64,000 bases of DNA from Macrostomum lignano (GCA_002269645.1 NIVC01000944.1:62001-126000), one strand, 5' to 3'. Shown: positions 7,011 through 64,000, counted from the first letter of the stretch. Numbers and translations are program-made. Notes: generated by a model from the sequence alone, not told the origin.

Positions 7011-7078
7011 CCCCCACCTGTCAAATCCACCATCTCCATCCAGGCGCAGCCTCTCCAAAGTCCGCCCCGCGTCTGGCA

Positions 7079-25045: not shown

Positions 25046-25239
25046 CTTAAGCTTGTGTGCCGCCCTCGCATTTCTGCATCCCAGCGATTCGGCCCTGTAC
25101 GCTGTTTCTATCTTATTAGCTTCGCATCAGCGGCTTGTTGCCTTTTTTCAGTGCAACAAACTGCCGCCCCGCTGTTGCAATTTGAGCATCGGGTTGCACT
25201 CTACGCCTCGCTGTATTTATTTATAACCCTGCCGCTTGC

Positions 25240-31938: not shown

Positions 31939-31996
31939 GTGGCACCCGGCCGCGCTCCCGCAGCCCAGGCCGGCCCAGCCCCACTAGCCGCACGCC

Positions 31997-33312: not shown

Positions 33313-33379
<67 letters not shown>

Positions 33380-36575: not shown

Positions 36576-37879
36576 GAAAGAGAGAGAGAAGGAAATTCAG
36601 GAAACTACTAAAGTACATAAAGTGTTGGCCTTGAGCCACGCGAAGTGCGCGTGAATTAAAATTCACTGCCCGCCCGCTGAGCTGAGGATGAATCGATGCT
36701 TCTGCGGCTTGACGCGGAGCTCTTGTCTTTGGGCAGGAGCTGCTGCCAGTAGATTAACTTCTTTTAGCAGAAGACAATCCTTGAGACTTGAAGAGTGTCA
36801 GCCTTGCTTAAAAATTTTAAAACAATGCCCTGCAGCTCCACCTGCGTCCCTGCCTGGCAATTGATCTTGCGTTCCCAGCTCCCCTCTGCCTGCCGAATCT
36901 TCCCATTGTCCTTGGAGAGCAGCTGCGGGCCCCCAGCTGCAGCTGCTGCCACCAGCATCTTTTGTTGCAGTTCTCGCAGCTCTGAGAAACTTTTTCAACT
37001 TGGGCTTCTGGTGCTTTCATCGATTGAGAGGCGCCTCTTTGTCTTTGAGCTGGGAAGCTTGGCTGTGCTGGCCTGCGATCTGCATCGACTGCAGCTGCGT
37101 CTGATGCAGCTGGCATGCGTGTAGGGACTTCCCCACTCTTCAAGTTGGGGTCTTGTAACTAAGGCCACTTACTAAACCTGCTCATCAAGATGACGTCAAT
37201 TTCGACCCCTACTGGGGGTGTTTCGGCTCGTATAAGCTCCAGCTTACACCGGTACTCAAACTTAAAGAGTAATAAATGCGCTTTATAAGCATTTTACCTT
37301 CACGAATGTGGTGCAGTATTTTGTAAAGCTCTTGAAACTAAGGAACAAGTCTAGTAAATATTTCGGGTGCTCACGCCCACGAACCATCAACCTGCGGTGA
37401 CTCACTGTACAGCAGAATATATTCGTACATTACCGCTTTAAATAATAAGTAGTTTGATTATCCCGAATACATGCGGGTTGCAGGTGGCATCCCGATGACT
37501 GGCAGCCTGCAAACTCTTGAACCGCCTCCAGACTGACAAACAATGGGCGCTCGGCCCAACCGACACTTAAGGGAGGGGAGGGAAGGCGACGGCAGAGCTG
37601 GGCTGCCCCTCACCATTGCTGCCGCTCCCCAGCTGCTGGAGAGGGTCCTGCGCGGCCCCGATTCGCCCGGGTTGCCCCTGGCAAAGCCGACGCCAAGCGC
37701 CAAAACACAGCATAATACAATGGAGATTTTTAAAGATGGGATCGGCCTCAGTCTTCCCCAGCCACTGCTAACCCGGCTTAAGCCCCGCTTGTTAAGCTCT
37801 CAACTTTGAATAATTTCCCTGAGTACCTTCCGGCAAAGCTGCTGCGAGATCTCGCTGTTGAACCGGCATTTCGTCAGTC

Positions 37880-40800
37880 ATGGCTGCGGCGATCACCCAG
37901 ATGACCGTCCAGCTGCTGCTGCTGCTCATCCCGGCAGCGCCATTCGCCAGAGCCGCCGGCGCCACAAATGGTATGGGCTGGAGACTAGGCGTAGGGCTAG
38001 TTGCAGTAGCAGCTACCTGCAGACAAGAGTATTGTCTTGCCTTGATTTTTTTGTCAGCTAAAAATCCCGACCTACCATCTACTTGCACTTGGCTTCTCAT
38101 TCCTCAGCTTGCCAGCTCACGCTGTCCATCAGTTGTTCTCTTACCGTGCGTAAATTAACAACTATTTTCAGGTATAAGTTTTTGTTTTGTCTCACCATGT
38201 GACTACCCAGTGCCGCGGCAACCACTGAAGCAGTACCCAGTGCCGCGGCGACCACTGAAGCAGTACCCAGTGCCGCGGCAACCACTGAAGCAGTACCCAG
38301 TGCCGCGGCAACCACTGAAACAGTACCCAGTCCGCCGAGTATAATGCTAGCACAAGAACAAACCCTGAACAAATCCGCAGACAACCAGTGCGCCAACCTG
38401 ACCATCGATACCGACCAGTACCTGTACAACTCGAGCAACCCCGACAGTCCTGTTAACACGGTGGGCAGTCACGTGAACATCACCTGCAAGGCTGGCTGGG
38501 GATTCGTGTTTGAGAACAGCAACCAGTCCAACTGGATGCGGCTGGACTGCCTGGAGGACCAGAGCTGGTCGCTCACCTTCTTCACCGACAACCAGTCCCG
38601 GCCTTGGACCACGCAGGCCACCGAGCTGCTCGACGAGGATCTGAAGCTGCCAATGTGCAAAGGTCAGGGGACTGACTTATGTATTTACTGGTTCATGCAT
38701 TTACTGGTTCAGACATGTACTTGTTCATGCACTTAATGGTTCACGCATTAACTGGTTCACGCATTTACTGGTTCATGCATTTACTGGTTCATGCATTTAC
38801 TGGTTCAGACATGTACTTGTTCATGCACTTAATGGTTCACGCATTAACTGGTTCACGCATTTACTGGTTCATGCATTTACTGGTTCATGCATTTACTGGT
38901 TCATGCATTTACTGGTTCATGCACTTAATGGTTCACGCATTTACTGGTTCAGACATGTACTGGTCCATGCACTTACTGGTTCATGCACTTAATGGTTCAC
39001 GCATTTACTGGTTCATGCATTTACTGGTTCACGCATTTACTGGTTCATGCATTTACTGGTTCACGCATTTACTGGTTCAGACATGTACTGGTCCATGCAC
39101 TTACTGGTTCATGCACTTAATGGTTCACGCATTTACTGGTTCATGCATTTACTGGTTCACGCATTTACTGGTTCATGCACTTAATGGTTCACGCATTTAC
39201 TGGTTCACGCATTTACTGGTTCATGCATTTACTGGTTCAGAAATGTACTGGTTCATGCACTTACTGGTTCACGCATTTACTGGTTCATGCACTTACTGGT
39301 TCACGCATTTACTGGTTCACGCATTTACTGGTTCATGCATTTACTGGTTCATGCACTTACTGGTTCACGCACTTAATGGTTCACGCATTTACTGGTTCAC
39401 GCATTTACTGGTTCAGACATGTACTGGTTCACGCACTTAATGGTTCACGCATTTACTGGTTCACGCATTTACTGGTTCATGCACTTAATGGTTCACGCAT
39501 TTACTGGTTCATGCATTTACTGGTTCACGCACTTAATGGTTCACGCATTTACTGGTTCACGCATTTACTGGTTCAGACATGTACTGGTTCACGCACTTAA
39601 TGGTTCACGCATTTACTGGTTCAGACATGTACTGGTTCATGCACTTAATGGTTCACGCATTTACTGCTTCATGCATTTACTGGTTCACGCATTTACTGGT
39701 TCACGCATTTACTGGTTCACGCATTTACTGGTTCATGCATTTACTGGTTCATGCATTTACTGGTTCACGCATTTACTGGTTCAGACATGTACTGGTTCAT
39801 GCACTTAATGGTTCACGCATTAACTGGTTCACGCATTTACTGGTTCACGCATTTACTGGTTCATGCACTTAATGGTTCACGCATTTACTGGTTCACGCAT
39901 TTACTGGTTCAGACATGTACTGGTTCATGCACTTAATGGTTCATGCATTTACTGGTTCACGCATTTACTGGTTCAGACATGTACTGGTTCATGCACTTAA
40001 TGGTTCACGCATTTACTGGTTCATGCATTTACTGGTTCACGCATTTACTGGTTCACGCATTTACTGGTTCATGCATTTACTGGTTCATGCATTTACTGGT
40101 TCAGACATGTACTGGTTCATGCACTTACTGGTTCACGCATTTACTGGTTCATGCATTTACTGGTTCACGCATTTACTGGTTCATGCACTTACTGGTTCAT
40201 GCACTTAATGGTTCACGCATTTACTGGTTCATGCATTTACTGGTTCACGCATTTACTGGTTCATGCATTTACTGGTTCATGCATTTACTGGTTCACGCAT
40301 TTACTGGTTCAGACATGTACTTGTTCATGCACTTAATGGTTCACGCATTAACTGGTTCACGCATTTACTGGTTCACGCATTTACTGGTTCATGCACTTAA
40401 TGGTTCACGCATTTACTGGTTCATGCATTTACTGGTTCATGCATTTACTGGTTCACGCATTTACTGGTTCAGACATGTACTTGTTCATGCACTTAATGGT
40501 TCACGCATTAACTGGTTCACGCATTTACTGGTTCACGCATTTACTGGTTCATGCACTTAATGGTTCACGCATTTACTGGTTCACGCATTTACTGGTTCAT
40601 GCATGTACTGGTTCATGCATGTACTGGTTCATGCATGTACTGGTTCATGCATGTACTGGTTCATGCATTTACTGGTTCATGCATGTACTGGTTCATGCAT
40701 GTACTGGTTCATGCATTTACTGGTTCATGCATTTACTGGTTCATGTATTTACTGGTTCATGCATTTACTGGTTCATACATTTACTGGTTCATGCATGTAC

Positions 40801-43800
40801 TGGTTCATGCATTTACTGGTTCATGTATTTACTGGTTCATGTATGTACTGGTTCATGCATTTACTGGTTCATGCATTTACTGGTTCATGTATTTACTGGT
40901 TCATGCATGTACTGGTTCATGTATTTACTGGTTCATGCATTTACTGGTTCATGCATTTACTGGTTTATGTATTTACTGGTTCATGCATTTACTGGTTCAT
41001 GCATTTACTGGTTCATGCATTTACTGGTTCATGCATTTACTGGTTCATGCATGTACTGGTTCATGCATTTACTGGTTCATGCATTTACTGGTTCATAAAT
41101 TTACTGGATCACGCATTCCATGGTTCAGGACTTCTGCGGCTGGTTCCGTACACAGCTGCATAGTCTCTACCAAGGTCTACTAGACTAGAAGGACGCAGCA
41201 CTTGCAAATCGTGCAAATATCAAATATATAATATATAATACCTGAAACATCACAAACCTGAAATATCACAAACCCGAAATATTATAACTCCGAAAGTGCT
41301 AGCAATGTCCAACGCTATTTTGGTTTTTGGAGTTATGATATTTCGGCTTTGTGATATTTCGGGTTAATTAACCACTTCGCGCCCAAGCTTGGTTCCGCAA
41401 GATGGCTTAAAAGCCCAAAGGCCTGCAGAGCAGTCCATAGACAAATTTGTCTTTTTTGCTGAATCGAGTGCACACCCTAGAAGCCCAGAAGTAAAGTATA
41501 TCACAGAGTTTTTCAGCTAGCTCCTGTTCAAACCTTCCTACCCACAAATGGCTTTTACGCGGCCGAATAGGACAGCTAAAAGTGACGCCTTGCGTAGACT
41601 GGGACTCGATTCCGATTCGGAAGACGCTTTATCAAGCAATGACTCGACGGTTTTTGAGTCAGAAACGGAGTCGGAAGGCATGGATCCAGAAATTGATCAG
41701 AGCCAAGATGAGGCGACCGCGGAATGGGTTGAAGTAACCCCTGGAAATGACAACTCGTTTGACCACGACGGGGTGCCGGAATTCCGAGGGTTTTTGACCA
41801 TCAATCTAAGCACTGGTCTACCAGAAAATCCAGACGAAAGTATGAAATAATTTTTATCAATCTTCCTGACTGAAGAGTTTCTCACCACCGTCTTGTCACA
41901 TGGACCAATGAGCGAATGTGGTTGGCTGTCAGGGAGTTCCAGCAGGAGAGTGCAGAAATGGCGAGGAAGAGAGCGAGAGTTGTTGTTGAGCTTAGCGGCG
42001 AAGTGCTGGGGAAGGATACCACAAATACACGGACGACTCCCTGCAACGGAAGCCCAGACTCGCCCAAGCAAACGATTCCGAATTTGAAACCTGACGTTCC
42101 AGCTAAGAAGACTTAGCTGGAATTAGTATTTTGCTGCAGCCAATGTCCCGGAAATCCTGGTCTCTGTCCAGATCCATGCTAATTCATCCACGCTTTATTT
42201 CCCCTTTAACATTTCCCATTTGAGTGAAAACACAATAGAAATGCACAATGGACGTCTTTAAATCAGTCATGGCCTGCACAGCAGGCCATACTGGGCACTT
42301 GCTTTAGTGATTGGGAGATGGTTTTTGATGCCATAGACATTTTTCAATCTCTGGGTTTCTGGGCCGTTTCGGTATGGCCTGCAGTGCAGGCCTTTGGCTT
42401 CCAAATGGTTAATTCCATTTCGGATTTGTGATATTTCGGGTTTGTGATATTTCGGGTTTGTGATATTTCGGGTTTGTGATATTTCGGGTTTGTGATATTT
42501 CGGGTTTGTGATATTTCGGGTTTGTGATATTTCGGGTTTGTGATATTTCGTGAAGTGTACATGCCCAACGATAAAAAAGTTAATGCCGCTGTACACTCCT
42601 TTGTGAGTGTGTGCCTGTATGTATGACTACGTTCGTATCCGCGCGCTTGTGTGCCTGCTCAGGGGAGTCGGCAAAATGGGCAGTAATTCCTCTCGCCGAT
42701 TGTGTGACAATGTCGCTTAAAGTGCTCCAGGGTGCACACAGCACACAGGGTTGGCCTAAACAAGCGTGAAACTAACCAATTCATGCTCGATGCTCAGGTC
42801 TTCGCCTTTTGGCATTGGTTTCGTAGGCAATCAGCTCACCAAATCTATCCTCACTTGCAGCCAGCCGGTGCGCCAACGTGACAATCGACCTCGGCCAGTA
42901 TCTGTACAACTCAAGCGACCCAAACGGACTGTCGACGGCATTCGGTAGTCACGTGAACGTCACGTGCAGAATTGGTGCTGGCGCCTACTTTGAGAACAGC
43001 AGCCAGGCCAACTGGATGCGACTCGACTGCGAGGAGGGCAAAGGCTGGTCGAGGACTTTCTTCACCGGGGGTGACTCGCAACCGCAGTCCGTTCAACCAA
43101 CGGAGCTGCTGGGCAGCATCCAGCCTGTGCTGCCCCAGTGCATTCGTGAGTAGATACAAGCCGCATGCCAGCCCCGTCCTCACTCCGTCCTGTCCCAGCT
43201 GTAGGCAACTGGAAACCGGCAAACCCCGGTCGTGTTTTCTTGACGTTGTTTGCGAATGACGTTTCCCAATTAACTCCAAATAACATGGAATGCAGTCAGG
43301 CTGCCGTGTCTTCTTTGACGTTGTTTGGGAATGACGTTTCCCAATTAACTCCAAATAACATGGAATGCAGTCAGGCTGCCGTGTCTTCTTTGACGTTGTT
43401 TGGGAATGACGTTTCCCAATTAACTCCAAATAACATGGAATGCAGTCAGGCTGCCGTGTCTTCTTTGACGTTGTTTGGGAATGACGTTTCCCAATTAACT
43501 CCAAATAACATGGAATGCAGTCAGGCTGCCGTGTCTTCTTTGACGTTGTTTGGGAATGACGTTTCCCAATTAACTCCAAATAACATGGAATGCAGTCAGG
43601 ATGGCGTGTCTTATTGACGCAGATTTTGATACTGTTACAAAAGGCTGATACTTGCACGATCCCTGCTATCTAAAGATTTGTGTGCAAAGGTTTATGACAA
43701 GACCCTTGTGTAACCTGAGTCTGTAGAGGTAAAGATAAATTTATTTAACCACATTTTTTTCTTGTCTACTTTTTGAGTGCACCATCCCCTGAAACAGTCG

Positions 43801-46800
43801 TTTTTATCATCAACGTACCTAGCATTTGGATTTCTTGGAATGTGCTGATGTTGTGAGAGTATGTTGTCTATTTTAGAGTGCACAATGTCTTTCAAAAAGC
43901 TAAGAGCTAATAACCCCTGCTTTGAAGACATTCCAACGATTTGGTGCCAGCCCATGCCGCAGTACGATTCAAGTCACGTGTACCGGCTCACGAACGCCGG
44001 CCTGAACTCCAGCGTCAACTTCTCGGTCGATGCTACGCTCGAAGTGACCTGCGCCAACAGCCAGCAGGAGTTCTACCGCAAGAGCGAAGTCGGCTCTAGG
44101 CGAGCAGAGCTGCTGTGCACCCCGGCCGGCACCTGGAACCTCACCATCTATTCTCTAGGCCAGCCATCGGTCGTTCAGGAGCGCAGGAACTTCAGCACAG
44201 ATGATGTTGTTGCTGTGCCGCGTTGCACAGGTATGCATAGCAGGGGTTGCAGAAGTTCTTGCCCGGTTACTTCGTCTGAGTTATTATCTACAGTCGGTCA
44301 TTTCGTCCAATAGGTGGCAAAGTTCGTCCCATCCTCATTTGTCTCGGGCCAAGCACCCGTCAATCTAGGAGCTGGTGTTTGTTATAATAATTTCAATTGT
44401 TTCTTTCCATTGCTACTCATGGAATTTAAAATCATGCCACATCTGACGTACTGTCTCGGATTACGGATGCTGCCCGAAAGAAATATGAGTATCTTCTACT
44501 CAGAAAACGCCTCAAATCCTAAGGTATTTATATACTTAAGGATGACAACTAACCATTTCGCAGACCGAATCTGCTGGCTGGACCCGGCGCAGCCCGGCCC
44601 GCAGTCCCGTCTTGTCTCGACAGCTCCGTCGGCCAACAGAACGGAGGTGACGGCGGGCTTCACCGCGCGGTTTCGCTGCCTCAGCGGCTACAAGGGCGGG
44701 CGGTTTGACAAGGAGATCAGCAGCGTGTGCCAGGCGCAGATGGACGCGATCAATAAGTAAGAAAATGGACCTTCCAGCTGCCATGCCCCCAGAACGCATT
44801 TAAAGAGCACACATTTTTAACTGCCTTTGAAACCTGCAGCCGCGAAGTGATGTCATGGTCACAGGACGACAACTTCACCGCCGGTTCCGACCCGAACATA
44901 TGCCTGCGTGAGTGTCTATTTTGCAGTCGAGTATCTTGACGTGGGCCTTCTATTGACCTACTTTATCTCTCCTAAAACACTGCAGACCAGTCCTTCTACC
45001 GCGGCTGCTTCTCCTGGCAAGAAATCCAGGACAGACTGAACGGCTCCAGCGCCCACCTCATGGACAACTTGACGCAACCGATTTCCGTCAGTGCTTGCAG
45101 GAGCACCTGCTATTACAAGAGTTTTCAGTTGGCTGCGGCGAAGCCCGCCAGCTGCTACTGCTTCAACCGCAGCAGCTCGGCGGGGAGCTTTGGCCCCAAT
45201 GAGACAGTTCCGTTCGTGCTCAGCAAGGCTGAACTGGAAGACCGGAACTTTCGCTGCCTGTCGGAGTGCGCCGAGTTGGAGCTCTGCGGCGGCGAGGCCA
45301 CGGACGAAAGCGGAGCCTTGGGCTTCTTGTCCGTCTATGATGCGTTCGGTAGGCACTGAGCTGCTCTTTACTCGCTTTAGGGTTACCCGGCCAGCATATG
45401 GGGGTTGAGGTTGGTGCACCCGGCCAGCATATGGGGGTTGAGGTTGGTGCACCCGGCCAGCATATGGGGGTTGAGGTTGGTGCACCCGGTCAGCATATGG
45501 GGGTTGGGGTTGGTGCACCCGGCCAGCATATGCGGGTTGGGGTTGGTGCACCCGGCCAGCATATGGGGGTTGGGGTTGGTGCACCCGGCCAGCATATGGG
45601 GGTTGGGGTTGGTGCACCCGGCCAGCATATGGGGGTTGGGGTTGGTGCACCCGGCCAGCATATGGGGGTTGGGGTTGGTGCACCCGGCCAGCATATGGGG
45701 GTTGGGGTTGGTGCACCCGGCCAGCATATGGGGGTTGGGGTTGGTGCACCCGGCCAGCATATGGGGGTAGAGGATAATGATAATCCATCATTGTAAAGTG
45801 ATTTCTTACAGCTAGTGTTATCAAAATGTTTAGAAACTAACTGCGGTTTCTTCGAATGCCAAGACAGCTTATCAAACTTTGATTCCAGGCACCAAGTGCA
45901 CAAACCTGTTTATCGACAACACAAAGTACCGCTTCGTATCGAGCGATCCCACCGGGCCCCTGTCAGCCGTTGGCAGCCACGTGAACGTCACATGCAAAAA
46001 AGGGAGCGGGTTCTACTTTAACAATGAGAACAGGTCCAACTGGATGCGACTCGACTGTCTGGAGGGCAAAGGCTGGTCGAGGACCTTCTTCACGGAGGGC
46101 GACACCAGGCCGCAGTCCGTTCAGCCACCGGAGCTGCTGGGCAACGTCCAGCCTGTGCTGCCCCAGTGCATTCGTGAGTGATGCATCCTGCCTTTGACTC
46201 CCGTAAATCATCTTTATCCGGCATTTTCAGTCGTTTCGCATTGGGAGATGTTTTCATTGTACTTTACTGCTTTCTGTTAGCTGAGACCGGGCCGCATTCT
46301 CAGCTTCTGCTTGTTTGAGCACTTTCATTGGTTGACTGTGATGTTTAAGCTTGATCACTTCAGCGCCTACAGATTTAACCAGAGTCTTAACTGGGTGTTG
46401 CTTCGGATTGATGAATGGAGACGGCTCATCCGCTGCTTAAATCAATTTACCTGGACATTTCAGCCCACCGGTGTGCTGAGTTCGATTCGAGCTCCATGAA
46501 TGAAACCAGCGCTGACCTGGGCGTCCTGGACCAGAAGAACTCTTACAACGCCAACGTAACTTACAGCTGCAACAGCCCAACCGTCGGCTATCGGATTTCG
46601 GGCGTGCCAAATGGCCTGGTCAACTATGCGAACCTGACGTGCACTTTTGATGGCTGGCTGGTGACGTTTTGGAGCGTCGGCAACGGCCCCGACACCACGC
46701 TGTCGCCGCAGATCATCGCGGAGCCGAGTCTCGAGTGCGAAGGCAAGGAACTTGACTTAGCGGCCTGCTTTCTACTTTCAGTTCCTGTTTTCTGGGCTCA

Positions 46801-55800: not shown

Positions 55801-58800
55801 ACGAGGTCCTCCGGAAAGGGGCGTCTTCTAGAAATAACAGAATCAGAGTCGTGTGCCCCTATCCGTTACTCTAGGGTACCAAAATCAATCAATCAATAAT
55901 CCTCTAAGAGTATCGGAATCGGTCCGCAGATCCTATTCAATCCTTTAGGAATAGGGAGGCCTCAAATTCAATAAGCTCAATGAAAATTAACTAAACGATA
56001 ACGGCCGGTACTAACACAGCTCTCGATAGTCAAATAACAAAGACGACGTCAAAGGCTTACCGATAGGTATAAATTTCCCTCGGAGACTCGTCAGGTCGCT
56101 CTGAGTCTCGAGAAACTGTTTTAAGTCTCTTTGGACTGCTCCGAGTCTGAGGTTTCAGCTCGGATTTTTGGCTTGTATTTATAGGCAACTTTTGCGAAAA
56201 CAAGGTCATTTCGATGAGGTGACGGGTTAAATTTGTAGGAATTTGACCCTTTGAAAATTGAATAGAATTTTTGCGAATACAATAGCTTTCCGGCATCACT
56301 TACCATATTGGGAGTTCTAATATTAAATGTAGCGGAATGGTCATTCACTTTTTTCGTGGTATTACAAAAATAGAGTGTGACCGCATGGCATTTAAAATTT
56401 GGGGTTTTGCGCATTTTTATCTTACTACTTCTAGTAGTGTGCTTATACTGTATTTTGGAGATCTCTACACTTATTCAAATTTGCATCATGGATTTATATT
56501 TCATTAGAGGCAGGGGACTGTGCGCACCCTGGCGCACTTTAAGTGACATTCTCACACAAGCCGGCGAGAGACATTACTGGAGAATGCACGCAGGCACACA
56601 GGAGTCACAGCGGCCCTGACTTTGGAATCGTCAGGCAATGTACACTCTCTGTGCCTTGGTGGTTGGCCCTCAGTGGCGTTGATTGCACGAGCAGACCCCA
56701 TGGGCTACCTCGTACTTAAGTAGTATAAACGACAGTTAAGTAGTCCGTGGCAGACCCCAGCCGAGATTCCAATCTAGCCCCAAGTCAACGTCACCTGGAA
56801 TCGAGCCTGGGCTGCTGGCACATCAGAGCTCCGCGCTGGGCTACGGCCCCCTTGCATCATGCATCCCCGTTTAATTGCAACAATGCCCAGTGATGCACAT
56901 TTGGTCTGTACATGACCGACCTAACGGCACGAGTGAACGCTGCAACAACTGATGATACTCACTAGAATACTTTAGAAAATTTCCCTATTTTTTTGCTTAA
57001 AGCACCCGCCCCAAGAAGGAAAAATGCGGACACAAAGGAGTTCAAAGAGAGGGTGCGAGTAGAAAAGGCGAGGAAACATAATCAATGGCTCAGTCAGTCA
57101 GTATGGGACGCATTACTATGCGCGCATGACATAAGCGCGCATTTTTAAACTAGTCTCAGTGACACAAGCGCGCATCTTAACTGCATGAGTCCGGCACATT
57201 ATAAATGAGCCCTAAATGCACGATGAATACCTACAGTCACGAGTGGTTATGTGTGGCAATTTGTGCATACATCTGTTTATCGTATTAAAGCGCGCTACTA
57301 TTAAAGCCCTCGACTGAAGCGACGGTCTGAGAACAGAGGGCCTGAGAATCACCGCAGCCCTCCCGACAGTATCAGTCCCCAATAAAATTACCAATATGGT
57401 CACGCAAAATGATGCACAAATCAAGTCTAAGCTGCAATGCAGTCTTGAACTCTGCTGCCACGCTGCCACAAATCAAGGAATCTTGTTCTAAGGTGACGCA
57501 ATTTCAATGTCGGTGTCACAATTCAGCCAGTCAACTGATAATGAATAATAAGCCAGTTGGTGATTTCAGTTGGTTGGAGGGTCAGGTCAGGTGAGCACAG
57601 GCTTAACAGCCCAGCCGTGGATGCAGGGCGCAGGGCGGAGAGGCTGCCTTGGGCTGGGTGCTTACAACCCCCAATTAGCACACACTGATTGGACGCGTGA
57701 ACATGAAGAATTAGAAGAATTGGGATCGCTAATCTGAACCCAAAAATTAAAGAACCGCTCGCTTCCCAACGCAGCTTTTTATTGGCTGAGGGTGGCTGGC
57801 TGAAAGAGAATCTGCTCCTGCCATCAATATAACCCGTGATCCAATTAAAATTGACTAACTTTATAGCGCTTACAGGTAACTTTATTGACTGTGAGTAGCA
57901 TTAATTAGTTCCAGTGAAAAGTTAAGTAGGGTGGGGGAGAGTTCCAGAAAATAACTTTGGCGTTGATTCAAAATTTTTTCGAACTTATCTGTTCTCTGTT
58001 TCGATTTAAATACAGTACATGTAATGTCGCTTGTGCTATATTTGCATTTCAGAGGCTCTTTTGAACGAGTTGTCTTTAAAATCTTCGAAACGGTGTCCGG
58101 CCAGGACTCCTGCGGTGACGCTTCGCAGGGGAAAAATCTGGCATTCTTCGCGTTGCTTGACACGACCTGGAGCTGCATCTCGAGCACGCCAGTGCTGCAC
58201 GCCACCTTCACCCATCCGAAATCTTTATACAGCTTTAATGGAAGCACCGGCGTGTCTAGCATGGCTCTGTGGACAAAGACTTACCTGAACACTGACAACA
58301 TGCCGACGACCACAGACGAGAGCTGCATCGAAGCCAACATACTAAAACTGAACACAACGATTGTTACTGCTAACAACTATTCAAAGATGTCGGCGAGCCC
58401 GTGTCCCGACAGCACTGACCAGGCCGAGCCCTCCTGGCTGTCCGGCGCCGGCAGCTGCGATCCCGGCTGGATGCAGATGGGCGAATTCTGCTTCCAGATG
58501 ACCGCAATGGCGACCACCTACGATGAAGCCCGGCTGTTCTGCAACCACTTCAATGCGACCCTGGCGGCGCCTCAGAACTACTCGCAAGTCAGGAGTTTCT
58601 ACACAGCCTGGACAAGATTTTACAGTTTCAACAGAGACCAGCAGCAGACTTCGAGCTATAACGGCCCAGGCTTTTGGGTTGGCGTGGCTGACAGAACTTC
58701 GACAAATCAGCTGGACACCGCGAGCGGATCCGCTGTCAACTACAGCTCGCTGATCTGCGGAATTCCGGTGGAGAAGCTCGGCATTCGCAAATTTGACAGC

Positions 58801-61800
58801 TCAGTTAACTGCCTCGAGGTTTTTACAAATACTTACAATGGAGACAAAGAAGCTGATTTTTTGAAAACTTCAAACTGCTATGATTACTCTCGGTACTTTT
58901 CGACTGTACCTTCAATGTTATATATAGATCAATATGCCTATCGATTGCAAGACTGCAAAAAGCAGCTAGCCGGAGTATTCTGCGAGAAGCCAATTAATAA
59001 AGGTAATTACAGACAGCGGTAATTACGTACAGCGGTAATTACGGACAGCGGTTTCAGAAGAGATTTTTACTCGCCTATGCCTCTTATAAATTGCAGTTCT
59101 GCACGGCTGCTACAGGCTGCACTGGTCGCTCATTCCTGACATGCAACAGCCGGAACTCGACCCCCAGCTGCACCTGCGTCAGTGCTTGGCTACCTGTAGC
59201 TGGAAAACCGCGCAGCTGGCGGCCTTGAGTCCCTACCGGTGCTACTGCATCGATTTCTCTGAGCTGATGAACCCCGCCATCGCCGTGCAGCTTCCCAGCA
59301 AGACTTGTTCGCGCACATGCAGCGGCAATCGGTACCAGACCTGCGGCGGCAGCTCGAGTTTAGTTGACACGGACATTGTGTCCGTCTATCGAGTGGGTGA
59401 GCTGATCTCCGAGTCATTGCGAATCCTGCTCGTCCAGCAATTTTAGCATTTTGTTGTAATTTTTTTACCCTCTGCCTACGGCAAGTCATGGATAGCATGG
59501 GCCTGTGAGGCCGTCTCCCGAGACACTAAAACTTCAGCTCAAATTTTTCGAAGGCGAGGGTTTTTTCCTTAGATGTATTTCAAATGTATGTTACACTGTT
59601 ACAGGGTGTTCGACCTTAGATGTATTTCAAATGTATGTTACACTGTTACAGGGTGTTTGACCTTAGATGTATTTCAAATGTATGTTACACTGTTACAGGG
59701 TGTTCGACCTTAGATGTATTTCAAATGTATGTTACACTGTTACAGGGTGTTTGACCTTAGATGTATTTCAAATGTATGTTACACTGTTACAGGGTGTTCG
59801 ACCTTAGATGTATTTCAAATGTATGTTACACTTTTACAGGGTGTTCGACCTTAGATGTATTTCAAATGTATGTTACACTGTTACAGGGTGTTCGACCTTA
59901 GATGTATTTCAAATGTATGTTACACTTTTACAGGGTGTTCGACCTTAGATGTATTTCAAATGTATGTTACACTGTTACAGGGTGTTCGACCTTAGATGTA
60001 TTTCAAATGTATGTTACACTGTTACAGGGTGTTTGACCTTAGATGTATTTCAAATGTATGTTACACTGTTACAGGGTGTTCGACCTTAGATGTATTTCAA
60101 ATGTATGTTACACTGTTACAGGGTGTTCGACCTTAGATGTATTTCAAGTGTATGTTACACTGTTACAGGGTGTTCGACCTTAGATGTATTTTAAATGTAT
60201 GTTACACTGTTACAGGGTGTTCGACCTTAGATGTATTTCAAATGTATGTTACACTGTTACAGGGTGTTCGACCTTAGATGTATTTCAAATGTATGTTACA
60301 CTGTTACAGGGTGTTTGACCTTAGATGTATTTCAAATGTATGTTACACTGTTACAGGGTGTTCGACCTTAGATGTATTTCAAATGTATGTTACACTGTTA
60401 CAGGGTGTTCGACCTTAGATGTATTTCAAATGTATGTTACACTGTTACAGGGTGTTCGACCTTAGATGTATTTTAAATGTTACACATTTATGAAATTCTG
60501 CCCTGCACAAATGGGATTTTCAAGTTCCCCTTCCCTGCTAATGAGCTCACCAATTCTATTAATTCACCCGCTGGCTCTTCCAGACCCGGCTTATCAAGAC
60601 ATTTCCGCCAGCTCATGCATGGATATTTTCCTCAAGGGTTTCTACCTGTCCGGATACTATCTGATCAACGGCCAACATCAGTATTGCTACCTGGCGGGTG
60701 AGTGAGAAGGGACAGTTAGATTTTGCGATTGTAACACCGTAATGCCTGCTTTGATCACTTCGGTATTTACGATGAAAAGTTATGACTCGGGATTTCATAA
60801 ACAATTGATGAATCCCCTATATAACTTTTCTTCGATCAAGGAGCTGTCGCTTCCTGCTGTGCAGGGCAGCCAGAATTAATAAACTGCTCGCCTTCTTTAG
60901 GAGCTGTCAAAAGTTTTCTTGGCGCTTGTTTCTTGCTTTTTGCCCCTTGTGCAATCCGCGGTTTCCTTCTTGCTTCTTGTATTTTTGTATTCCGGTGTCC
61001 GGGCATCTGCAGTGCGGACCACCGAGAGCGCAGTTGCAACTGGTGCCCGGATGCGGATGCACTGGGCTCTCCTCTTCTAAGCTGGACTGGCCATTTTCCA
61101 GACTGCCTTAGAATTTTACTCAGATACCTCTAATCTGCTGAGAGTTAGTGGTCATTCCGAGCTAAGGGTTAGCACCAGATAGCTAACCCTTGGAGACGTC
61201 TGATCTCTGTGGAAGATTGTAGTTGGTTCACTTGTGTTGGAATTCTCTCGGTTCGGCTTGGATGTGGAAGATTGTAGTTGGTTCACTTGTGTTGGAATTC
61301 TCTCGGTTCGGCTTGGATGTGGAAGATTGTAGTTGGTTCACTTGTGTTGGAACCCTCTCGGTTCGGCTTGGATGTGGAAGATTGTAGTTGGTTCACTTGT
61401 GTTGGAATTCTCTCGGTTCGGCTTGGATGTGGAAGATTGTAGTTGGTTCACTTGTGTTGGAATTCTCTCGGTTCGGCTTGGATGTGGAAGATTGTAGTTG
61501 GTTCACTTGTGTTGGAACCCTCTCGGTTCGGCTTGGATGTGGAAGATTGTAGTTGGTTCACTTGTGTTGGAACCCTCTCGGTTCGGCTTGGATGTGGAAG
61601 ATTGTAGTTGGTTCACTTGTGTTGGAACCCTCTCGGTTCGGCTTGGATGTGGAAGATTGTAGTTGGTTCACTTGTGTTGGAATTCTCTCGGTTCGGCTTG
61701 GATGTGGAAGATTGTAGTTGGTTCACTTGTGTTGGAATTCTCTCGGTTCGGCTTGGATGTGGAAGATTGTAGTTGGTTCACTTGTGTTGGAACCCTCTCG

Positions 61801-64000
61801 GTTCGGCTTGGATGTGGAAGATTGTAGTTGGTTCACTTGTGTTGGAACCCTCTCGGTTCGGCTTGGATGTGGAAGATTGTAGTTGGTTCACTTGTGTTGG
61901 AACCCTCTCGGTTCGGCTTGGATGTGGAAGATTGTAGTTGGTTCACTTGTGTTGGAATTCTCTCGGTTCGGCTTGGATGTGGAAGATTGTAGTTGGTTCA
62001 CTTGTGTTGGAACCCTCTCGGTTCGGCTTGGATGTGGAAGATTGTAGTTGGTTCACTTGTGTTGGAATTCTCTCGGTTCGGCTTGGATGTGGAAGATTGT
62101 AGTTGGTTCACTTGTGTTGGAACCCTCTCGGTTCGGCTTGGATGTGGAAGATTGTAGTTGGTTCACTTGTGTTGGAACCCTCTCGGTTCGGCTTGGATGT
62201 GGAAGATTGTAGTTGGTTCACTTGTGTTGGAACCCTCTCGGTTCGGCTTGGATGTGGAAGATTGTAGTTGGTTCACTTGTGTTGGAATTCTCTCGGTTCG
62301 GCTTGGATGTGGAAGATTGTAGTTGGTTCACTTGTGTTGGAATTCTCTCGGTTCGGCTTGGATGTGGAAGATTGTAGTTGGTTCACTTGTGTTGGAATTC
62401 TCTCGGTTCGGCTTGGATCTCTTTTATGTCAGATTTTTGCGTTTGACATGGCATGGCATGATTTAGACTAGGGCTTTCTAGTCTACTGCAGGCGTACCTG
62501 ATTGAGTTTTGGTTACTGTCTTGGGGGATTGGCTGGTTGCGGGTGACGGATGATGAGTCATGCTGCTTTCTAAAACCGTTGGTCAGTTGACTTTCTGGTT
62601 AATGCATTGCAACTAACATGTGAATTCTATTTTTAGATTCTTTTATTTTCAAGCGCATGCTCACCGTTCAAAAATAAGAACATGGGAATTCTATTTTTAG
62701 ATTCTTTTATTTTCAAGCGCATGCTCACCGTTCAAAAATAAGTAGAATACTCCACACTCTACACAATAGGCTGTTGCCTTCGTGCTTTTTTGCTCATTTA
62801 GTCGTAAATCTGTCAAAAGAAACTTAAATTTACGCTCATGCTTTTGCACCGAAGTTCTTGATGGCTTCTCTCGTTTAATTAGCCTGAGAAAAGCGGCTCA
62901 GCTGAGAAGTTTATGAGGCACTTTAAGCCAATTTTTGAGACACCGGAGGCCTTATAAATTTAAAAATACTTCAAGATAAATGCAAAAAGTCGGCTTAAGA
63001 TGGTTTAGCGTCTAAATTTTGTGCGACAAGCGTCTCTACTCGTGATGTCTGTATCTGGCGGTTTACCTGCTCAAAAGCGGCTTAAGTGTAACATTTATCG
63101 CAAAAAACTTAAAGTGTCACTGGCGTAATGTTGCTATACTCGTATCGTTGCGATGTAGTAACTCCATTGGTTTGAAATGCTTGGACACTAAAAGTACAGT
63201 ATGAGGTAGAAGCTCTTTCAACAACGAACTCAAGTTGACGGATGTCCATAGGGCTTTATGAAGGCTCTATGATGAGTAGCTTGAAAGAAAGCTCAGGCCA
63301 TATTTTACCTTGGATCCTTATAAGATCCTTATATTTGAGTACCAAGACATTGTATTGAGAGTCAACGAAATTCTACTGAGTCTGCCGAGAACTGCATTAG
63401 ATTTGTATAGGCAGTGAAACTTGAACTATGCAGTAATTATGTCTTCATTGACTCTTCTGCTTCTGCACCGATGTAATGTTTCAGATAACTCAACACGGCT
63501 CTGCAACGAGAGCAACAGCTTTGCATACAAGGGCTCGTGCTTCACGTTTTTCCCGGGTGTGGCCACTTTCGAGTCAGCGCAGAGCAGCTGCGCTCTCAGA
63601 GGCGGAAACCTGGCGAGCTTTTCAACTCAGGGGCATCAAGAGCTTTTCCTCACGGTGTTGTCCAGTGAGATTTTTATAGCCGACAGCTTAATGAGCTGAG
63701 CAATTATGCACCAGGTACAGACTAAGCTTCTTTGTTATTTCAGGCATTTACTCGATGACGAACTCGTCCTATTGGTGGCTCGGCTTCACCGATCCCAAGA
63801 GACAAAAGACTCCCATGTGGCTCAACGGGCACGTCTACTCTCTCAGCGAGTTTTCTCCTCAAAGCAACAGGTTCCTGATGTTTCGAAACACAACCTTCGA
63901 AGTTGTCGATCAACCTGTCTCGTTACAATTGGTGGAAAAAGATTTTACAACGTCAGAATGGAACTTTACTGTTTATAAAAATGGTTTCTATTATGAACTG
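37880..64000 (+). CDS. Giant secreted or membrane mosaic lectin-like protein (Sushi/CCP-like, WSC, C-type lectin, fibrinogen-like modules), at least 22 exons, over 2260 aa, truncated by window end
   Basis: Exons: 37880-37970 (signal peptide), 38381-38662, 42861-43145, 43928-44230, 44564-44756, 44840-44907, 44986-45348 (WSC), 45889-46173, 46464-46742, 48167-48463, 48918-49110, 49620-50314 (repeat plus WSC), 50597-51007 (WSC plus FReD-N-like), 51642-51824 and 53116-53376 (CTL), 54262-54579 (WSC), 54940-55432, 58053-59002 (unknown domain plus CTL), 59097-59396 (WSC), 60584-60697 (FReD-N-like), 63485-63664 and 63744->64000 (CTL). The phases chain without frame break and most introns are phase 1. 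Confidence 0.8.
38203..38330. repeat. 30-bp tandem repeat x4 (could encode SAAATTEAVP)
   Basis: In frame with the downstream Sushi-like exon; exonic status uncertain. Confidence 0.85.
38680..41110. repeat. 2.4-kb minisatellite, 16-bp unit (catttactggttca[t/c]g) with higher-order variants
   Basis: Intron 2 of the mosaic gene; source of the many YWFMHLLVH ORFs. Confidence 0.96.
41241..42550. repeat. Foldback-like inverted repeat built of 17-bp units (gtgatatttcgggttt(g)), interrupted by the piggyBac insertion
   Basis: 41241-41295 is the reverse complement of 41326-41363. The same unit resumes in tandem at about 42418-42550, after the TTAA. Confidence 0.7.
41372..42408 (+). mobile_element. Internally deleted piggyBac-like (PGBD4-type) element
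   Basis: TTAA at 41368-71 and 42409-12. Ends CCACTT.../...AAATGG. Related subterminal ccaaaggcctgca motif at both ends. Acidic N-terminal transposase remnant (41548-41900, ..PENPDESMK*FLSIFLTEEFL). C-terminal Cys-rich remnant (PATEAQTRPSKR.. and FCCSQCPGNPGLCPDPC, about 42030-42190). The catalytic core is absent. Confidence 0.75.
43240..43612. repeat. 75-bp tandem repeat, about 5 copies
   Basis: Period 75 (43254 versus 43329); intronic. Confidence 0.93.
45385..45768. repeat. 27-bp minisatellite (cccggccagcatatgggggttggggttggtgca-type)
   Basis: About 14 copies, intronic. Confidence 0.95.
46830..48068. repeat. 12-bp minisatellite (gtgtgctgatt[a/g]) with 13/14-bp variants
   Basis: Intron after exon 46464-46742. 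Confidence 0.96.
48595..48765 (-). mobile_element. Copy of the same SINE lacking the tRNA-like head
   Basis: Shares attgattacacctgccctaa..gatgtgcaacc..cagctcagcc and ccccagctaatgct..acccatt.tacagctgggtgaactgaagcaa with 51270-51549. Confidence 0.7.
49640..49955 (+). repeat. 33-bp minisatellite derived from a splice-acceptor junction; probably coding ([A/S]DQSHYPIRS[N/T] x9)
   Basis: Each unit contains [cg/ct]cag|accagtcc. The frame is open throughout and contiguous with the WSC exon. Confidence 0.9.
51270..51549 (-). mobile_element. tRNA-derived SINE with CORE-like central segment and (TTA)n tail
   Basis: The reverse complement begins tagcctagtggttagagcg (A box) ... ggttcgattc (B box). It continues ttgagcaag...cagttcacccagctgtaaaatgggta, resembling the CORE/MIR core, and ends in an att/tta tail. 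A second copy lies at about 48595. Confidence 0.75.
56790..56850 (-). mobile_element. Degenerate tRNA-like head, possible SINE remnant
   Basis: The reverse complement reads ggggccgtagcccagcg...cccaggctcgattccagg (A/B-box-like). It does not form a complete cloverleaf. Confidence 0.35.
59567..60480. repeat. 47-bp minisatellite, about 19 copies
   Basis: Period 47 (59567 versus 59614); highly homogeneous, intronic. Confidence 0.96.
61209..62420. repeat. 54/55-bp minisatellite, about 22 copies
   Basis: Two variants (aattctctc and aaccctctc); intronic. Confidence 0.96.

What the first reader, a model, noticed from the sequence alone, without database searches (positions are those of the whole stretch)
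37880..64000. Giant Sushi-WSC-CTL-fibrinogen-like mosaic protein: candidate glycan-recognition (immune, mucus or adhesion) receptor
Seen in sequence: at least 22 phase-compatible exons give over 2260 aa. They encode a signal peptide, 8 divergent Sushi/CCP-like Cys modules, 5 WSC-like domains (Y/HxGC...C...C...CGG...SVY), 3 C-type lectin domains, 2 fibrinogen-N-like motifs (SC.E/D..SG/N.Y.I/L...C) and an unassigned domain. Established knowledge: WSC and CTL bind glycans (WSC binds beta-glucan in fungi; WSC plus CTL occur in polycystin-1), and FReDs are invertebrate pattern-recognition lectins. Inference: I do not recognise this combination as a named family. It may be a lineage-specific multi-lectin receptor or secreted matrix protein.
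Basis: partly seen in the sequence, partly recalled or inferred. Interest (0 to 1): 0.72.

Follow-up and report, generated by a model that had tools for sequence, protein, structure and literature searches.

The report
Giant flatworm lectin-like mosaic gene
This is a real, intact gene of the flatworm Macrostomum lignano that encodes the first 2,181 residues of a huge secreted or cell-surface glycoprotein built from known sugar- and protein-binding modules in an undescribed order; it is a lineage-specific curiosity, and nothing yet shows what it does.

Summary
On the + strand, 37880-64000 carries 23 exons. Every acceptor is AG; 21 donors are GT and one is GC. The exons splice into a stop-free 2,181-aa reading frame that runs off the window.

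The protein has:
- a signal peptide;
- 8 four-cysteine CCP/Sushi-like modules;
- 5 WSC domains (Pfam 85 bits, all 8 Cys invariant);
- 3 C-type-lectin-like domains, each preceded by a short two-cysteine module;
- a ~260-aa region with no detectable relatives.

An internal four-module cassette was duplicated and has evolved under purifying selection (dN/dS 0.27-0.39). The organism is Macrostomum lignano. UniProt already holds frame-shifted fragment models of this locus, auto-named 'Sushi domain-containing' and 'Peptidase S1 domain-containing', plus a paralog fragment.

An exhaustive HMMER search with exon 18 against 1.84 billion proteins found no relative outside this species beyond generic lectin-domain hits.

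- The lectin-like domains lack the canonical Ca2+/sugar-binding motifs.
- The 'fibrinogen-N-like' resemblance is not significant, and there are three such modules, not two.
- The Sushi assignment is sub-threshold.
- No transmembrane segment is seen, and the C-terminus lies outside the window.

Most likely this is a multivalent extracellular binding scaffold. Its function is untested and its interest is moderate to low.

The parts
37880..37970 (+). Exon 1: start ATG and signal peptide (MAAAITQMTVQLLLLLIPAAPFARA|AG). An AG lies 2 nt upstream of the ATG and may be a trans-splice acceptor.
   Evidence: It is the only Kyte-Doolittle hydrophobic stretch in the protein.
38381..38662 (+). Exon 2: CCP/Sushi-like module A1 (4 Cys).
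   Evidence: Pfam Sushi E = 0.015 as the only hit.
42861..43145 (+). Exon 3: CCP-like module A2. It starts duplicated cassette 1.
   Evidence: It is 66% aa identical to exon 7, with dN/dS 0.34, and 83% nt identical to exon 7. The junction to exon 4 is reproduced in P0022.
43928..44230 (+). Exon 4: CCP-like module B1.
   Evidence: Pfam Sushi E = 0.064. It is paralogous to exon 9, with dN/dS 0.34.
44564..44907 (+). Exons 5a (44564-44756) and 5b (44840-44907): CCP-like module C1, split by a phase-2 intron.
   Evidence: The junction is reproduced in P0022. It is paralogous to exons 10a/10b.
44986..45348 (+). Exon 6: WSC domain 1 (8 Cys).
   Evidence: Pfam WSC matches full length at 22.6 bits. The 8 Cys are invariant. 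dN/dS against exon 11 is 0.27.
45889..46173 (+). Exon 7: CCP-like module A3. It starts duplicated cassette 2.
46464..46742 (+). Exon 8: CCP-like module D, an extra module with no partner in cassette 1. It ends in a GC donor.
   Evidence: Pfam Sushi E = 0.037-0.08.
48167..48463 (+). Exon 9: CCP-like module B2.
48918..49260 (+). Exons 10a (48918-49110) and 10b (49193-49260): CCP-like module C2, split by a phase-2 intron at the same place as in exon 5.
   Evidence: Pfam Sushi E = 0.099.
49946..50314 (+). Exon 11: WSC domain 2.
   Evidence: Pfam WSC 21.3 bits; alignment.
50597..51007 (+). Exon 12: WSC domain 3, followed by the first two-Cys pre-CTLD module (RSCKEQ...VFCSM).
   Evidence: Pfam WSC 33.9 bits, above the cut-off.
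51642..53376 (+). Exons 13 (51642-51824) and 14 (53116-53376): C-type-lectin-like domain 1. It is long-form with 6 Cys and has no EPN/WND motifs.
   Evidence: PDB CD94/KLRD1/CLEC12A hits at residues 1164-1232; alignment.
54262..54579 (+). Exon 16: WSC domain 4.
   Evidence: Pfam WSC 23.8 bits.
54940..55432 (+). Exon 17: Cys-free region of unknown fold. The old UniProt model P0001 uses an internal donor at 55145/55146 instead.
   Evidence: The coding signal of the second half is at the 99th percentile of intron windows. There are no Pfam or PDB hits. AF2 pLDDT is 31.
58053..59002 (+). Exon 18: end of the unknown region (~100 aa), the second two-Cys pre-CTLD module, and C-type-lectin-like domain 2 (8 Cys, long inserts).
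   Evidence: Pfam UL45/Lectin_C. PDB CTLD hits at 1714-1822. P0001 is 100% identical over residues 1-71, and the paralog P0002 is 39-43% identical.
59097..59396 (+). Exon 19: WSC domain 5.
   Evidence: Pfam WSC 36.5 bits, above the cut-off.
60584..60697 (+). Exon 20: third two-Cys pre-CTLD module (SSCMDIFLKGFYLSGYYLINGQHQYC).
   Evidence: The only PDB hits are the ficolin-1 N-terminus at E ~1.
63485..64000 (+). Exons 21 (63485-63664) and 22 (63744-64000 and beyond): C-type-lectin-like domain 3, incomplete because the gene runs off the window.
   Evidence: Best Pfam Lectin_C stretch at 2063-2131. PDB hit to bitiscetin at E = 6.7e-6. No strong donor was found before the window end.

Best explanation
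This is one intact, expressed-type gene of Macrostomum lignano. It encodes the N-terminal 2,181 or more residues of a giant, heavily N-glycosylated, disulfide-rich extracellular protein.

Shown by the sequence:
- A cleavable signal peptide is followed by modules in the order A1 | [A2-B1-C1-WSC1] | [A3-D-B2-C2-WSC2] | [WSC3-p-CTLD1] | [WSC4-unknown-p-CTLD2] | [WSC5-p-CTLD3...]. Here A-D are CCP/Sushi-like four-Cys modules and p is a short two-Cys module.
- The gene grew by tandem duplication of whole cassettes along phase-1 introns.
- The copies have since been kept under purifying selection.

Inferred mechanism:
- The protein acts outside the cell as a multivalent binding scaffold.
- The five WSC domains are the likeliest carbohydrate-binding units.
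- The three CTLDs lack the Ca2+/sugar site, so they more probably bind protein or non-canonical ligands.
- The CCP-like modules act as spacers or protein-binding units.
- Many weak sites on one long chain would cross-link glycoconjugates.

I favour a secreted matrix, mucus or gland product over a signalling receptor. No membrane anchor is seen. M. lignano is documented to use small secreted WSC proteins in the prostate and a large lectin-domain protein in its adhesive. Whether the missing C-terminus carries an anchor is unknown.
For: Gene reality: see the gene model, the codon-usage signal, dN/dS of 0.27-0.39 between cassette copies, and the UniProt fragments of the same locus that reproduce junctions.

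Extracellular nature:
- The signal peptide is the only hydrophobic segment.
- There are 97 Cys, in exact multiples per module.
- There are 51 N-X-S/T sequons against 23 expected from composition.

Domains:
- WSC scores 85 bits over 5 stretches, with 8 invariant Cys plus the GC...CGG...Y pattern.
- Lectin_C scores 51 bits, and PDB CTLD hits fall at three places.
- Sushi sums to 27.6 bits, and four modules hit Sushi as the only family. A profile of the modules hits MASP-1 and C1r CCPs best among PDB chains. UniProt auto-names the N-terminal fragment 'Sushi domain-containing'.

Cassette duplication: protein and DNA similarity of E3-E6 to E7 and E9-E11.

Species context:
- Many prostate-limited secreted candidates in M. 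lignano are WSC-domain proteins (PMC5977470 supplement; PMC4490696 and PMC6953679).
- The adhesive protein Mlig-ap1 carries a C-type lectin domain next to a glycosylated partner (PMC6410801).
Against: - No expression, localisation or binding data for this gene were available.
- The C-terminus is missing, so a transmembrane anchor or signalling module cannot be excluded.
- The WSC domains are divergent; 3 of 5 fall below the Pfam cut-off individually.
- Metazoan WSC ligands are essentially unknown. Glycan binding by WSC is established mainly for fungal proteins, which I state from general knowledge.
- The CCP assignment is sub-threshold. The AlphaFold model of a CCP-like module was low-confidence (pLDDT 54), and Foldseek found no CCP match.
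- About 260 aa have no assignable fold.
- Whether all 23 exons sit on one mRNA was not shown with transcript data.
Confidence: 0.5

Rival explanations
1. It is a soluble or membrane-bound pattern-recognition (immune) lectin. The multiple WSC and lectin-like modules would recognise microbial glycans such as beta-glucan, and the CCP modules would recruit downstream factors, as in complement and Limulus factor C-type systems.
For: - WSC, CTLD and CCP modules are all present.
- CCP plus CTLD combinations occur in innate-immune proteins, which I state from general knowledge.
- The gene is lineage-specific and has a divergent paralog, as expected for fast-evolving recognition genes.
Against: - The CTLDs lack the EPN/QPD and WND sugar-binding motifs.
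- No protease or other effector domain is detectable. The 'Peptidase S1' name attached to the UniProt fragment could not be reproduced: Pfam gave no hit, and hhalign scored 11.4 against a shuffle mean of 13.0.
- dN/dS of about 0.3 shows constraint rather than diversifying selection, although the estimate is averaged over whole exons.
- There are no induction data.
Confidence: 0.15
2. It is the N-terminal ectodomain of a polycystin-1 / receptor-for-egg-jelly-type protein. The missing downstream part would then carry PKD or REJ modules, a GPS site, a PLAT domain and multi-pass membrane segments. The WSC and CTLD modules would serve as the ligand- or matrix-sensing head.
For: - PKD1 is the classic animal protein that combines a WSC domain and a C-type lectin domain in its N-terminal ectodomain (domain tables in PMC5318412).
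- The gene is very long and is cut off by the window end.
Against: - No LRR, PKD, REJ, GPS or PLAT match appears anywhere in 2,181 aa, whereas PKD1 has PKD repeats from about residue 280 and again from about residue 1000.
- There are five WSC and three CTLDs in repeated cassettes, against one of each in PKD1.
- CCP modules are not part of PKD1.
Confidence: 0.1
3. The exons do not form one gene. They would be several adjacent small genes, as in a tandem array of secreted WSC or lectin proteins like the prostate candidates, or a decaying pseudogene array.
For: - UniProt models of the older assembly cover the locus only as separate fragments (P0022 for E1-E6, P0001 for E17-E18).
- M. lignano has many small WSC-domain transcripts.
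Against: - There is only one signal peptide and one plausible start codon.
- Every internal exon begins and ends mid-codon in compatible phases, and there is no in-frame stop over 6,543 nt.
- No exon other than E1 starts with a hydrophobic leader.
- The fragmentation of the old models coincides with frame-shift errors in them.
- Purifying selection acts on the duplicated exons.
Confidence: 0.05

Closest known systems
Polycystin-1 (PKD1) N-terminal ectodomain
   Same: It is an animal protein that combines a WSC domain and a C-type lectin domain in a very long extracellular region (PMC5318412).
   Different: PKD1 has LRRs, one WSC, one CTLD, an LDL-A module, many PKD repeats, REJ, GPS, PLAT and 11 TM segments. 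Here there are 5 WSC, 3 CTLDs and 8 CCP-like modules, and no LRR, PKD or REJ within 2,181 aa. The C-terminus is unknown.
Small secreted WSC-domain proteins of the M. lignano prostate (putative seminal-fluid proteins such as Mlig-pro46 and RNA815_80.4)
   Same: Same species and same domain type. They show that M. lignano uses WSC modules in secreted gland products.
   Different: Their transcripts are 0.3-1.4 kb with one or two WSC domains. This gene is more than 6.5 kb of coding sequence with CCP-like and CTLD modules. The Mlig-pro46 RNAi primers do not match the window.
Mlig-ap1 and other large invertebrate adhesive or cohesive proteins (sea-star Sfp1)
   Same: They are giant, Cys-rich, secreted mosaics that carry lectin-type domains and are thought to cross-link glycosylated partners (PMC6410801).
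   Different: Mlig-ap1 has Lys/Arg-rich regions, a vWD-C8-TIL unit and 17 EGF modules, and Mlig-ap2 has TSP1 and LDLa modules. None of these is present here, and those proteins have no WSC or CCP modules.
CCP-plus-CTLD proteins: selectins, lecticans, Limulus factor C, MASP/C1r
   Same: They combine complement-control-protein modules with a C-type lectin domain in extracellular recognition proteins. MASP-1 and C1r CCPs are the best PDB sequence matches of the four-Cys modules.
   Different: The matches are weak (E = 0.02-0.2). The modules here are 87-101 aa rather than about 60 aa. No EGF, CUB, LCCL or active protease domain is present, and the CTLDs lack the Ca2+ site.
Fungal WSC lectins and cell-wall sensors (Wsc1, WSC3), animal KREMEN and WSCD1/2
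   Same: They share the eight-cysteine WSC fold. In fungi, tandem WSC domains bind beta-glucan; this is from general knowledge and was not tested here.
   Different: Their partners differ (a Ser/Thr-rich stalk plus TM, Kringle/CUB, or a sulfotransferase domain). None has CCP or CTLD cassettes.
Macrophage mannose receptor family and invertebrate multi-CTLD proteins
   Same: They carry several CTLDs on one chain. These were the only non-Macrostomum hits of the exhaustive search.
   Different: Those hits have canonical EPN/WND CTLDs in uninterrupted tandem, identity is only 20-30% over the CTLD, and they have no WSC or CCP-like cassettes.

Membership tests
WSC domain (Pfam PF01822) | A full-length match to the family profile at or above the curated cut-off (27.8 bits). 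| tested here: met
   The whole protein scores 85 bits (E = 4.4e-24) over 5 stretches. Exons 12 and 19 pass on their own at 33.9 and 36.5 bits. Exons 6, 11 and 16 score 21-24 bits but match profile positions 1-82 or 3-82.
WSC domain (Pfam PF01822) | Eight conserved cysteines in a module of about 90-120 aa. | tested here: met
   All 8 Cys are invariant in the alignment of the five copies, together with the leading G-C and the C-terminal Tyr. The Cys count is 8 per domain.
WSC domain (Pfam PF01822) | Carbohydrate binding. | not testable with these tools
   This needs recombinant protein and glycan arrays or pull-downs.
C-type lectin-like domain (Pfam PF00059) | A profile match above the cut-off, the conserved Cys framework and a WIGL-type core. 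| tested here: met
   Lectin_C scores 51.4 bits against a cut-off of 22.6, and UL45 (CTLD-like) scores 34.5 bits. PDB CTLD hits fall at three separate places. The C...C...C framework and W-x-G/E-L core align with DC-SIGN. CTLD3 is incomplete.
C-type lectin (Ca2+-dependent sugar-binding subgroup) | An EPN or QPD triplet and a WND triplet at Ca2+ site 2. | tested here: not met
   In the alignment with DC-SIGN and a canonical invertebrate CTLD, none of the three domains has EPN/QPD or WND at the aligned positions.
Sushi / CCP / SCR module (Pfam PF00084) | A profile match above the cut-off (20.7 bits) for individual modules. | tested here: inconclusive
   The summed score is 27.6 bits (E = 4e-6), but no single stretch is significant. 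Four of 8 modules give Sushi as their only Pfam hit at 13.5-16.1 bits, E = 0.015-0.1. A profile of the modules finds MASP-1 CCP1-2 (E = 0.023) and C1r CCP (E = 0.17) among PDB chains. UniProt auto-annotates the fragment as Sushi domain-containing.
Sushi / CCP / SCR module (Pfam PF00084) | About 60 aa, four Cys (1-3 and 2-4 disulfides), and a conserved Trp between Cys3 and Cys4. | tested here: inconclusive
   The four Cys and the Trp after Cys3 are invariant in the six aligned single-exon modules. The modules are 87-101 aa, with about 30 residues between the Trp and Cys4 instead of about 12. The disulfide pattern is untestable. The AF2 model is low-confidence (pLDDT 54), and Foldseek found no CCP match.
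Fibrinogen-related domain (FReD, Pfam PF00147) | A globular domain of about 220 aa that matches the family profile. | tested here: not met
   There is no Fibrinogen_C hit at E <= 1. Only 30-45-aa two-Cys modules exist. One gives ficolin-1 as its only PDB hit at E ~1, and another gives nothing.
Polycystin-1 / PKD1-like / REJ family | LRR and PKD repeats in the ectodomain. | tested here: not met
   No LRR or PKD family hit appears in 2,181 aa.
Polycystin-1 / PKD1-like / REJ family | A REJ module, GPS cleavage site, PLAT domain and multi-pass membrane region. | not testable with these tools
   If present, they would lie downstream of window position 64000. None occurs in the part seen.
Peptidase S1 (trypsin-like) domain, the name given by UniProt to fragment A0A1I8I2V5 | A profile match to the chymotrypsin fold and the His/Asp/Ser triad. 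| tested here: not met
   Neither the spliced region nor P0001 gives a Pfam Trypsin hit at E <= 10. No S1 protease appears among PDB hits. hhalign against an alignment of four S1 proteases scores 11.4, below the mean of 100 shuffles (13.0 +/- 2.3). Only motif-level echoes remain (PWQPLSL, GQDSCGDAS).
M. lignano adhesive proteins Mlig-ap1 / Mlig-ap2 | KR-rich regions, vWD-C8-TIL, EGF arrays (ap1); LDLa, TSP1, 221/255-aa repeats (ap2). | tested here: not met
   None of these families is hit. The architectures are as described in PMC6410801.
M. lignano prostate WSC transcript Mlig-pro46 | It contains the published RNAi primer sites. | tested here: not met
   Both primers give 0 matches in the window, even with up to 3 mismatches. 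The other prostate WSC transcripts were not tested.

The most novel reading that the evidence does not exclude
This gene and its paralog(s) may found a Macrostomum- or flatworm-specific family of giant multi-lectin surface receptors. In that reading, a new composite recognition unit (WSC + two-Cys module + Ca2+-independent CTLD) and an orphan domain of about 260 aa would sense environmental, microbial or partner-derived glycans. Alternatively it is the sensing head of a polycystin-1/REJ-like receptor used in gamete or mechanical sensing. Either reading would give a new type of metazoan WSC-based receptor in a genetically tractable worm.
Probability: 0.12. Interest if true: 0.6.

Novelty: new member of a known kind. 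Interest (0 to 1): 0.3.

Why it matters
The ligands and roles of animal WSC domains are almost unknown outside polycystin-1 and KREMEN. M. lignano seems to have expanded WSC proteins, as shown by the many prostate-limited candidates. A 2,000+-residue protein with five WSC domains and three non-canonical lectin-like domains, in an RNAi-tractable and transparent worm, could serve as a handle on what metazoan WSC modules bind. It could also show how giant secreted lectin scaffolds are built by cassette duplication.

In practical terms, the work shows that the public protein models of this locus are frame-shifted fragments with misleading automatic names (one carries 'Peptidase S1'), and it supplies a corrected 23-exon model.

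Beyond that, the gene is one of many lineage-specific extracellular mosaics typical of invertebrate genomes. Without expression or binding data it does not answer any long-standing question.

Tried and rejected
1. A word-indexed protein search with all exons concatenated (2,057 aa) and another with exons 19-22 found nothing. A search with exons 3-6 found only P0022, which turned out to be a frame-shifted model of this same locus, not a paralog.
3. AlphaFold on the alignment of six CCP-like exons gave pLDDT 54, and Foldseek against the PDB gave no hit at E <= 0.001 and no CCP match. AlphaFold on exon 17 gave pLDDT 31. Both are uninformative.
4. UniProt's name for P0001 and motif echoes (PWQPLSL, GQDSCGDAS) suggested that the unknown region is a degenerate trypsin-like domain. 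Pfam, PDB phmmer and hhalign with a shuffle control did not support this. About 50 residues of the C-terminal barrel would also be missing.
5. The fibrinogen-N idea has only one weak match, to ficolin-1 at E ~1.
6. The gene is not identical to the prostate WSC transcript Mlig-pro46, because its primers are absent from the window.
7. Look-ups of the contigs that encode P0001, P0002 and P0022 found nothing on record, so no downstream sequence could be obtained.
8. A search for further paralogous exons, and for genes on the minus strand of 37-64 kb, found none.
9. The ORF at 53928-54191, which superficially resembles a lectin-domain fragment, has no Pfam hit, shows no similarity to the other domains and is not needed for phase continuity. 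I left it out.
10. Literature searches for WSC, C-type lectin and Sushi architectures, and for flatworm WSC proteins, returned nothing that describes this architecture.
Full report
**What is there.** I translated the + strand of 37-64 kb in three frames. That gave a series of long open segments rich in regularly spaced cysteines, separated by minisatellite-filled gaps. I located AG acceptors and GT donors around each conserved segment and assembled a model of 23 exons from the ATG at 37880 to the window end.
- All 22 acceptors are AG. Twenty-one donors are GT and one is GC (AAG|GCAAGG after exon 8).
- Nineteen introns are phase 1. The other three are phase 2: two interrupt paralogous modules at the same place (E5a/b and E10a/b) and one joins E17 to E18.
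- The spliced frame is 6,543 nt, or 2,181 aa, with no stop, and it is still open at position 64000.

**Is it real?** Several independent lines say yes.
- Each of the eight four-Cys modules has exactly 4 Cys and each WSC domain exactly 8.
- Exons 3-6 and exons 7 and 9-11 are an old internal duplication, with 47-66% amino-acid identity and up to 83% nucleotide identity. Their dN/dS is 0.27-0.39 at dS 0.7-1.5, so they are coding sequence under purifying selection.
- A leave-one-out codon-usage log-likelihood is positive for 22 of the 23 exons. E10b, with 23 codons, is about zero. Intron windows average -0.60 +/- 0.31.
- tblastn of the model against the whole window finds nothing outside the annotated exons and nothing on the minus strand. 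Minus-strand and leftover ORFs have no Pfam hits.

**Organism and database status.** It searched 1.84 billion representatives and returned 21 hits.
- P0001 is 100% identical, and P0002 is 39-43% identical. Both are Macrostomum lignano UniProt entries, A0A1I8I2V5 and A0A1I8JHT8.
- The other hits are generic multi-CTLD proteins at 20-30% identity.
- A word-indexed search with exons 3-6 returned P0022 (A0A1I8JQ75, 'Sushi domain-containing protein', M. lignano).
- Mapping P0022 back shows that it is the same locus translated with frame jumps, so it is a model from an indel-ridden older assembly. It still reproduces my E3/E4, E4/E5a and E5a/E5b junctions.
- P0001 joins the first 56 residues of exon 17 directly to exon 18 through a weak internal donor (ct|gttgcc). 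The 95 codons it skips are open, end at a consensus GTAAGT donor in the same phase, and have a coding signal at the 99th percentile of intron windows. I therefore keep them as exon and flag the alternative.
- The gene is thus not new to databases, but it exists there only as mis-framed, automatically named fragments. P0002 shows that at least one paralog has the same 'two-Cys module + CTLD2' arrangement.

**Domains.**
- WSC: Pfam on the whole model gives 85 bits over five stretches. An alignment of the five WSC copies shows all eight Cys, the leading G-C and the C-terminal Tyr invariant.
- CTLD: Pfam gives Lectin_C at 51 bits and UL45 (a CTLD-like family) at 34.5 bits. PDB searches hit only C-type lectin-like domains, at three places.
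- CTLD sugar site: aligned with DC-SIGN and a canonical invertebrate CTLD, none of the three domains has EPN/QPD or WND. They are lectin-like domains, not predicted Ca2+-dependent sugar binders. CTLD3 is cut by the window, and its second half is atypical.
- Sushi: the summed Pfam score is 27.6 bits against a cut-off of 20.7, but no single stretch is significant. Four of the eight modules hit Sushi as their only family at E = 0.015-0.1.
- A profile of six modules finds MASP-1 and C1r CCP modules as its best non-antibody PDB matches, at E = 0.02-0.2. The modules share the C...C...C-x5-W...C pattern, but at 87-101 aa they are much longer than the usual ~60 aa.
- AlphaFold with the six-paralog alignment was low-confidence (pLDDT 54), and Foldseek found no CCP. 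'CCP-like' is therefore plausible but not proven.

**The small and the unknown parts.**
There are three copies, plus one in the paralog.
- Only the third copy resembles the start of a fibrinogen-related domain, and only weakly. Ficolin-1 is its sole PDB hit at E ~1. The first copy hits nothing. No Fibrinogen_C profile hit exists.
- The ~260-aa Cys-poor region between WSC4 and the second two-Cys module has no Pfam or PDB match and no confident AlphaFold model (pLDDT 31).
- The exon-18 part of that region has no relatives outside M. lignano in the exhaustive search.
- UniProt names P0001 'Peptidase S1 domain-containing', and I could see echoes of PWQVSL and GDSGGP. A controlled hhalign against four S1 proteases scored below shuffled sequences, so I reject that assignment.

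**Architecture.** The order is SP | A1 | [A2-B1-C1-WSC1] | [A3-D-B2-C2-WSC2] | [WSC3-p-CTLD1] | [WSC4-U-p-CTLD2] | [WSC5-p-CTLD3...].
- Nearly every module is one phase-1 exon, which is the classic substrate for exon shuffling and cassette duplication.
- The only hydrophobic segment is the signal peptide.
- There are 51 N-glycosylation sequons against 23 expected from composition.
- The product is therefore an extracellular glycoprotein. Whether it is anchored depends on sequence beyond the window.

**How it most likely works.**
- Shown: it is a secretory-pathway protein made of many disulfide-bonded binding-type modules that are kept under constraint.
- Inferred: it is a multivalent extracellular scaffold. 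The WSC domains are the candidate glycan binders. The CTLDs bind protein or non-canonical ligands. The CCP-like modules act as spacers or protein-binding units.
- Species context makes a secreted role plausible. Many prostate-limited putative seminal-fluid transcripts of M. lignano are small WSC proteins (PMC5977470 supplement). Its adhesive Mlig-ap1 carries a C-type lectin domain next to a glycosylated partner (PMC6410801).
- This gene is neither of those. It has no vWD, EGF, TSP1 or KR regions, and the Mlig-pro46 primers are absent from the window.
- The rivals cannot be excluded: an immune pattern-recognition lectin, the head of a PKD1/REJ-like receptor (PKD1 is the textbook WSC + CTLD protein), or several separate genes. 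I rank them 0.15, 0.10 and 0.05, against 0.5 for the scaffold reading.

**Novelty and verdict.** The architecture matches no named family, and I found no orthologue outside Macrostomum. Every assignable part nevertheless belongs to a well-known module type, and lineage-specific extracellular mosaics of this sort are common in invertebrate genomes. I rate it a new member of a known kind, with interest 0.3. The most useful concrete output is the corrected 23-exon model and the list of decisive experiments.

Noticed in passing
window 19876-22439 (+): Exons of an aconitase gene. The Pfam Aconitase and Aconitase_C hits have E = 7e-56 and 2.8e-40. Its introns are filled with minisatellites.
   Followed up: partly
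window 25186-27369 (+): A single 728-aa open reading frame with about 18 leucine-rich repeats (Pfam LRR_8, E = 4e-57). It looks like an intronless SHOC2-type gene with a low-complexity N-terminus.
   Followed up: partly
window 31988-33777 (+): Exons of a nucleotide-sugar transporter (Pfam Nuc_sug_transp, E = 1e-36 and 3e-42), directly upstream of the big glycoprotein gene. A trinucleotide run at about 33300-33380 is open in all three frames (poly-Leu, poly-Tyr, poly-Thr).
   Followed up: partly
window 29655-30257 (-): A mariner/DDE-type transposase remnant (Pfam Transposase_1 and DDE_3) lies between the LRR gene and the transporter gene.
   Followed up: partly
window 7662-8510 (+), and neighbouring ORFs 6761-10032: GC-rich ORFs with a weak alpha-dystroglycan N-terminal domain 2 hit (E = 0.003). 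They may be exons of a dystroglycan-like gene.
   Followed up: no
whole window; in the gene at 38679-41117, 43231-43619, 45385-45768, 46828-48069, 49635-49958, 59567-60480 and 61208-62418: Minisatellites are extraordinarily dense: 48 Tandem Repeats Finder rows in 64 kb. Almost every intron over 0.5 kb carries its own array, with units of 12-75 bp and lengths up to 2.4 kb. Several arrays are open in all frames and inflate naive ORF lists. The array at 49635-49958 abuts the acceptor of exon 11 and repeats that acceptor motif about ten times.
   Followed up: partly
window 46742/46743: The intron after exon 8 has a GC donor (GAAG|GCAAGG). It is the only non-GT donor in the gene.
   Followed up: yes
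window 37876-37880: An AG preceded by a pyrimidine-rich stretch lies 2 nt upstream of the start ATG (tttcgtcag|TCATGG). This would fit spliced-leader trans-splicing, but no transcript data were available to check it.
   Followed up: no
window 41521-42113 (+), in intron 2: An acidic, Ser/Asp/Glu-rich ORF of about 110-190 aa with no Pfam hit. It looks like a transposon-derived fragment, but that was not tested.
   Followed up: no
UniProt A0A1I8I2V5 (P0001) and A0A1I8JQ75 (P0022), mapped to window 54978-58266 and 37825-45344: The public protein models of this locus are fragments. P0022 switches reading frame several times within exons, and P0001 skips 95 codons of exon 17. The automatic name 'Peptidase S1 domain-containing protein' could not be reproduced with Pfam, PDB or hhalign.
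   Followed up: yes
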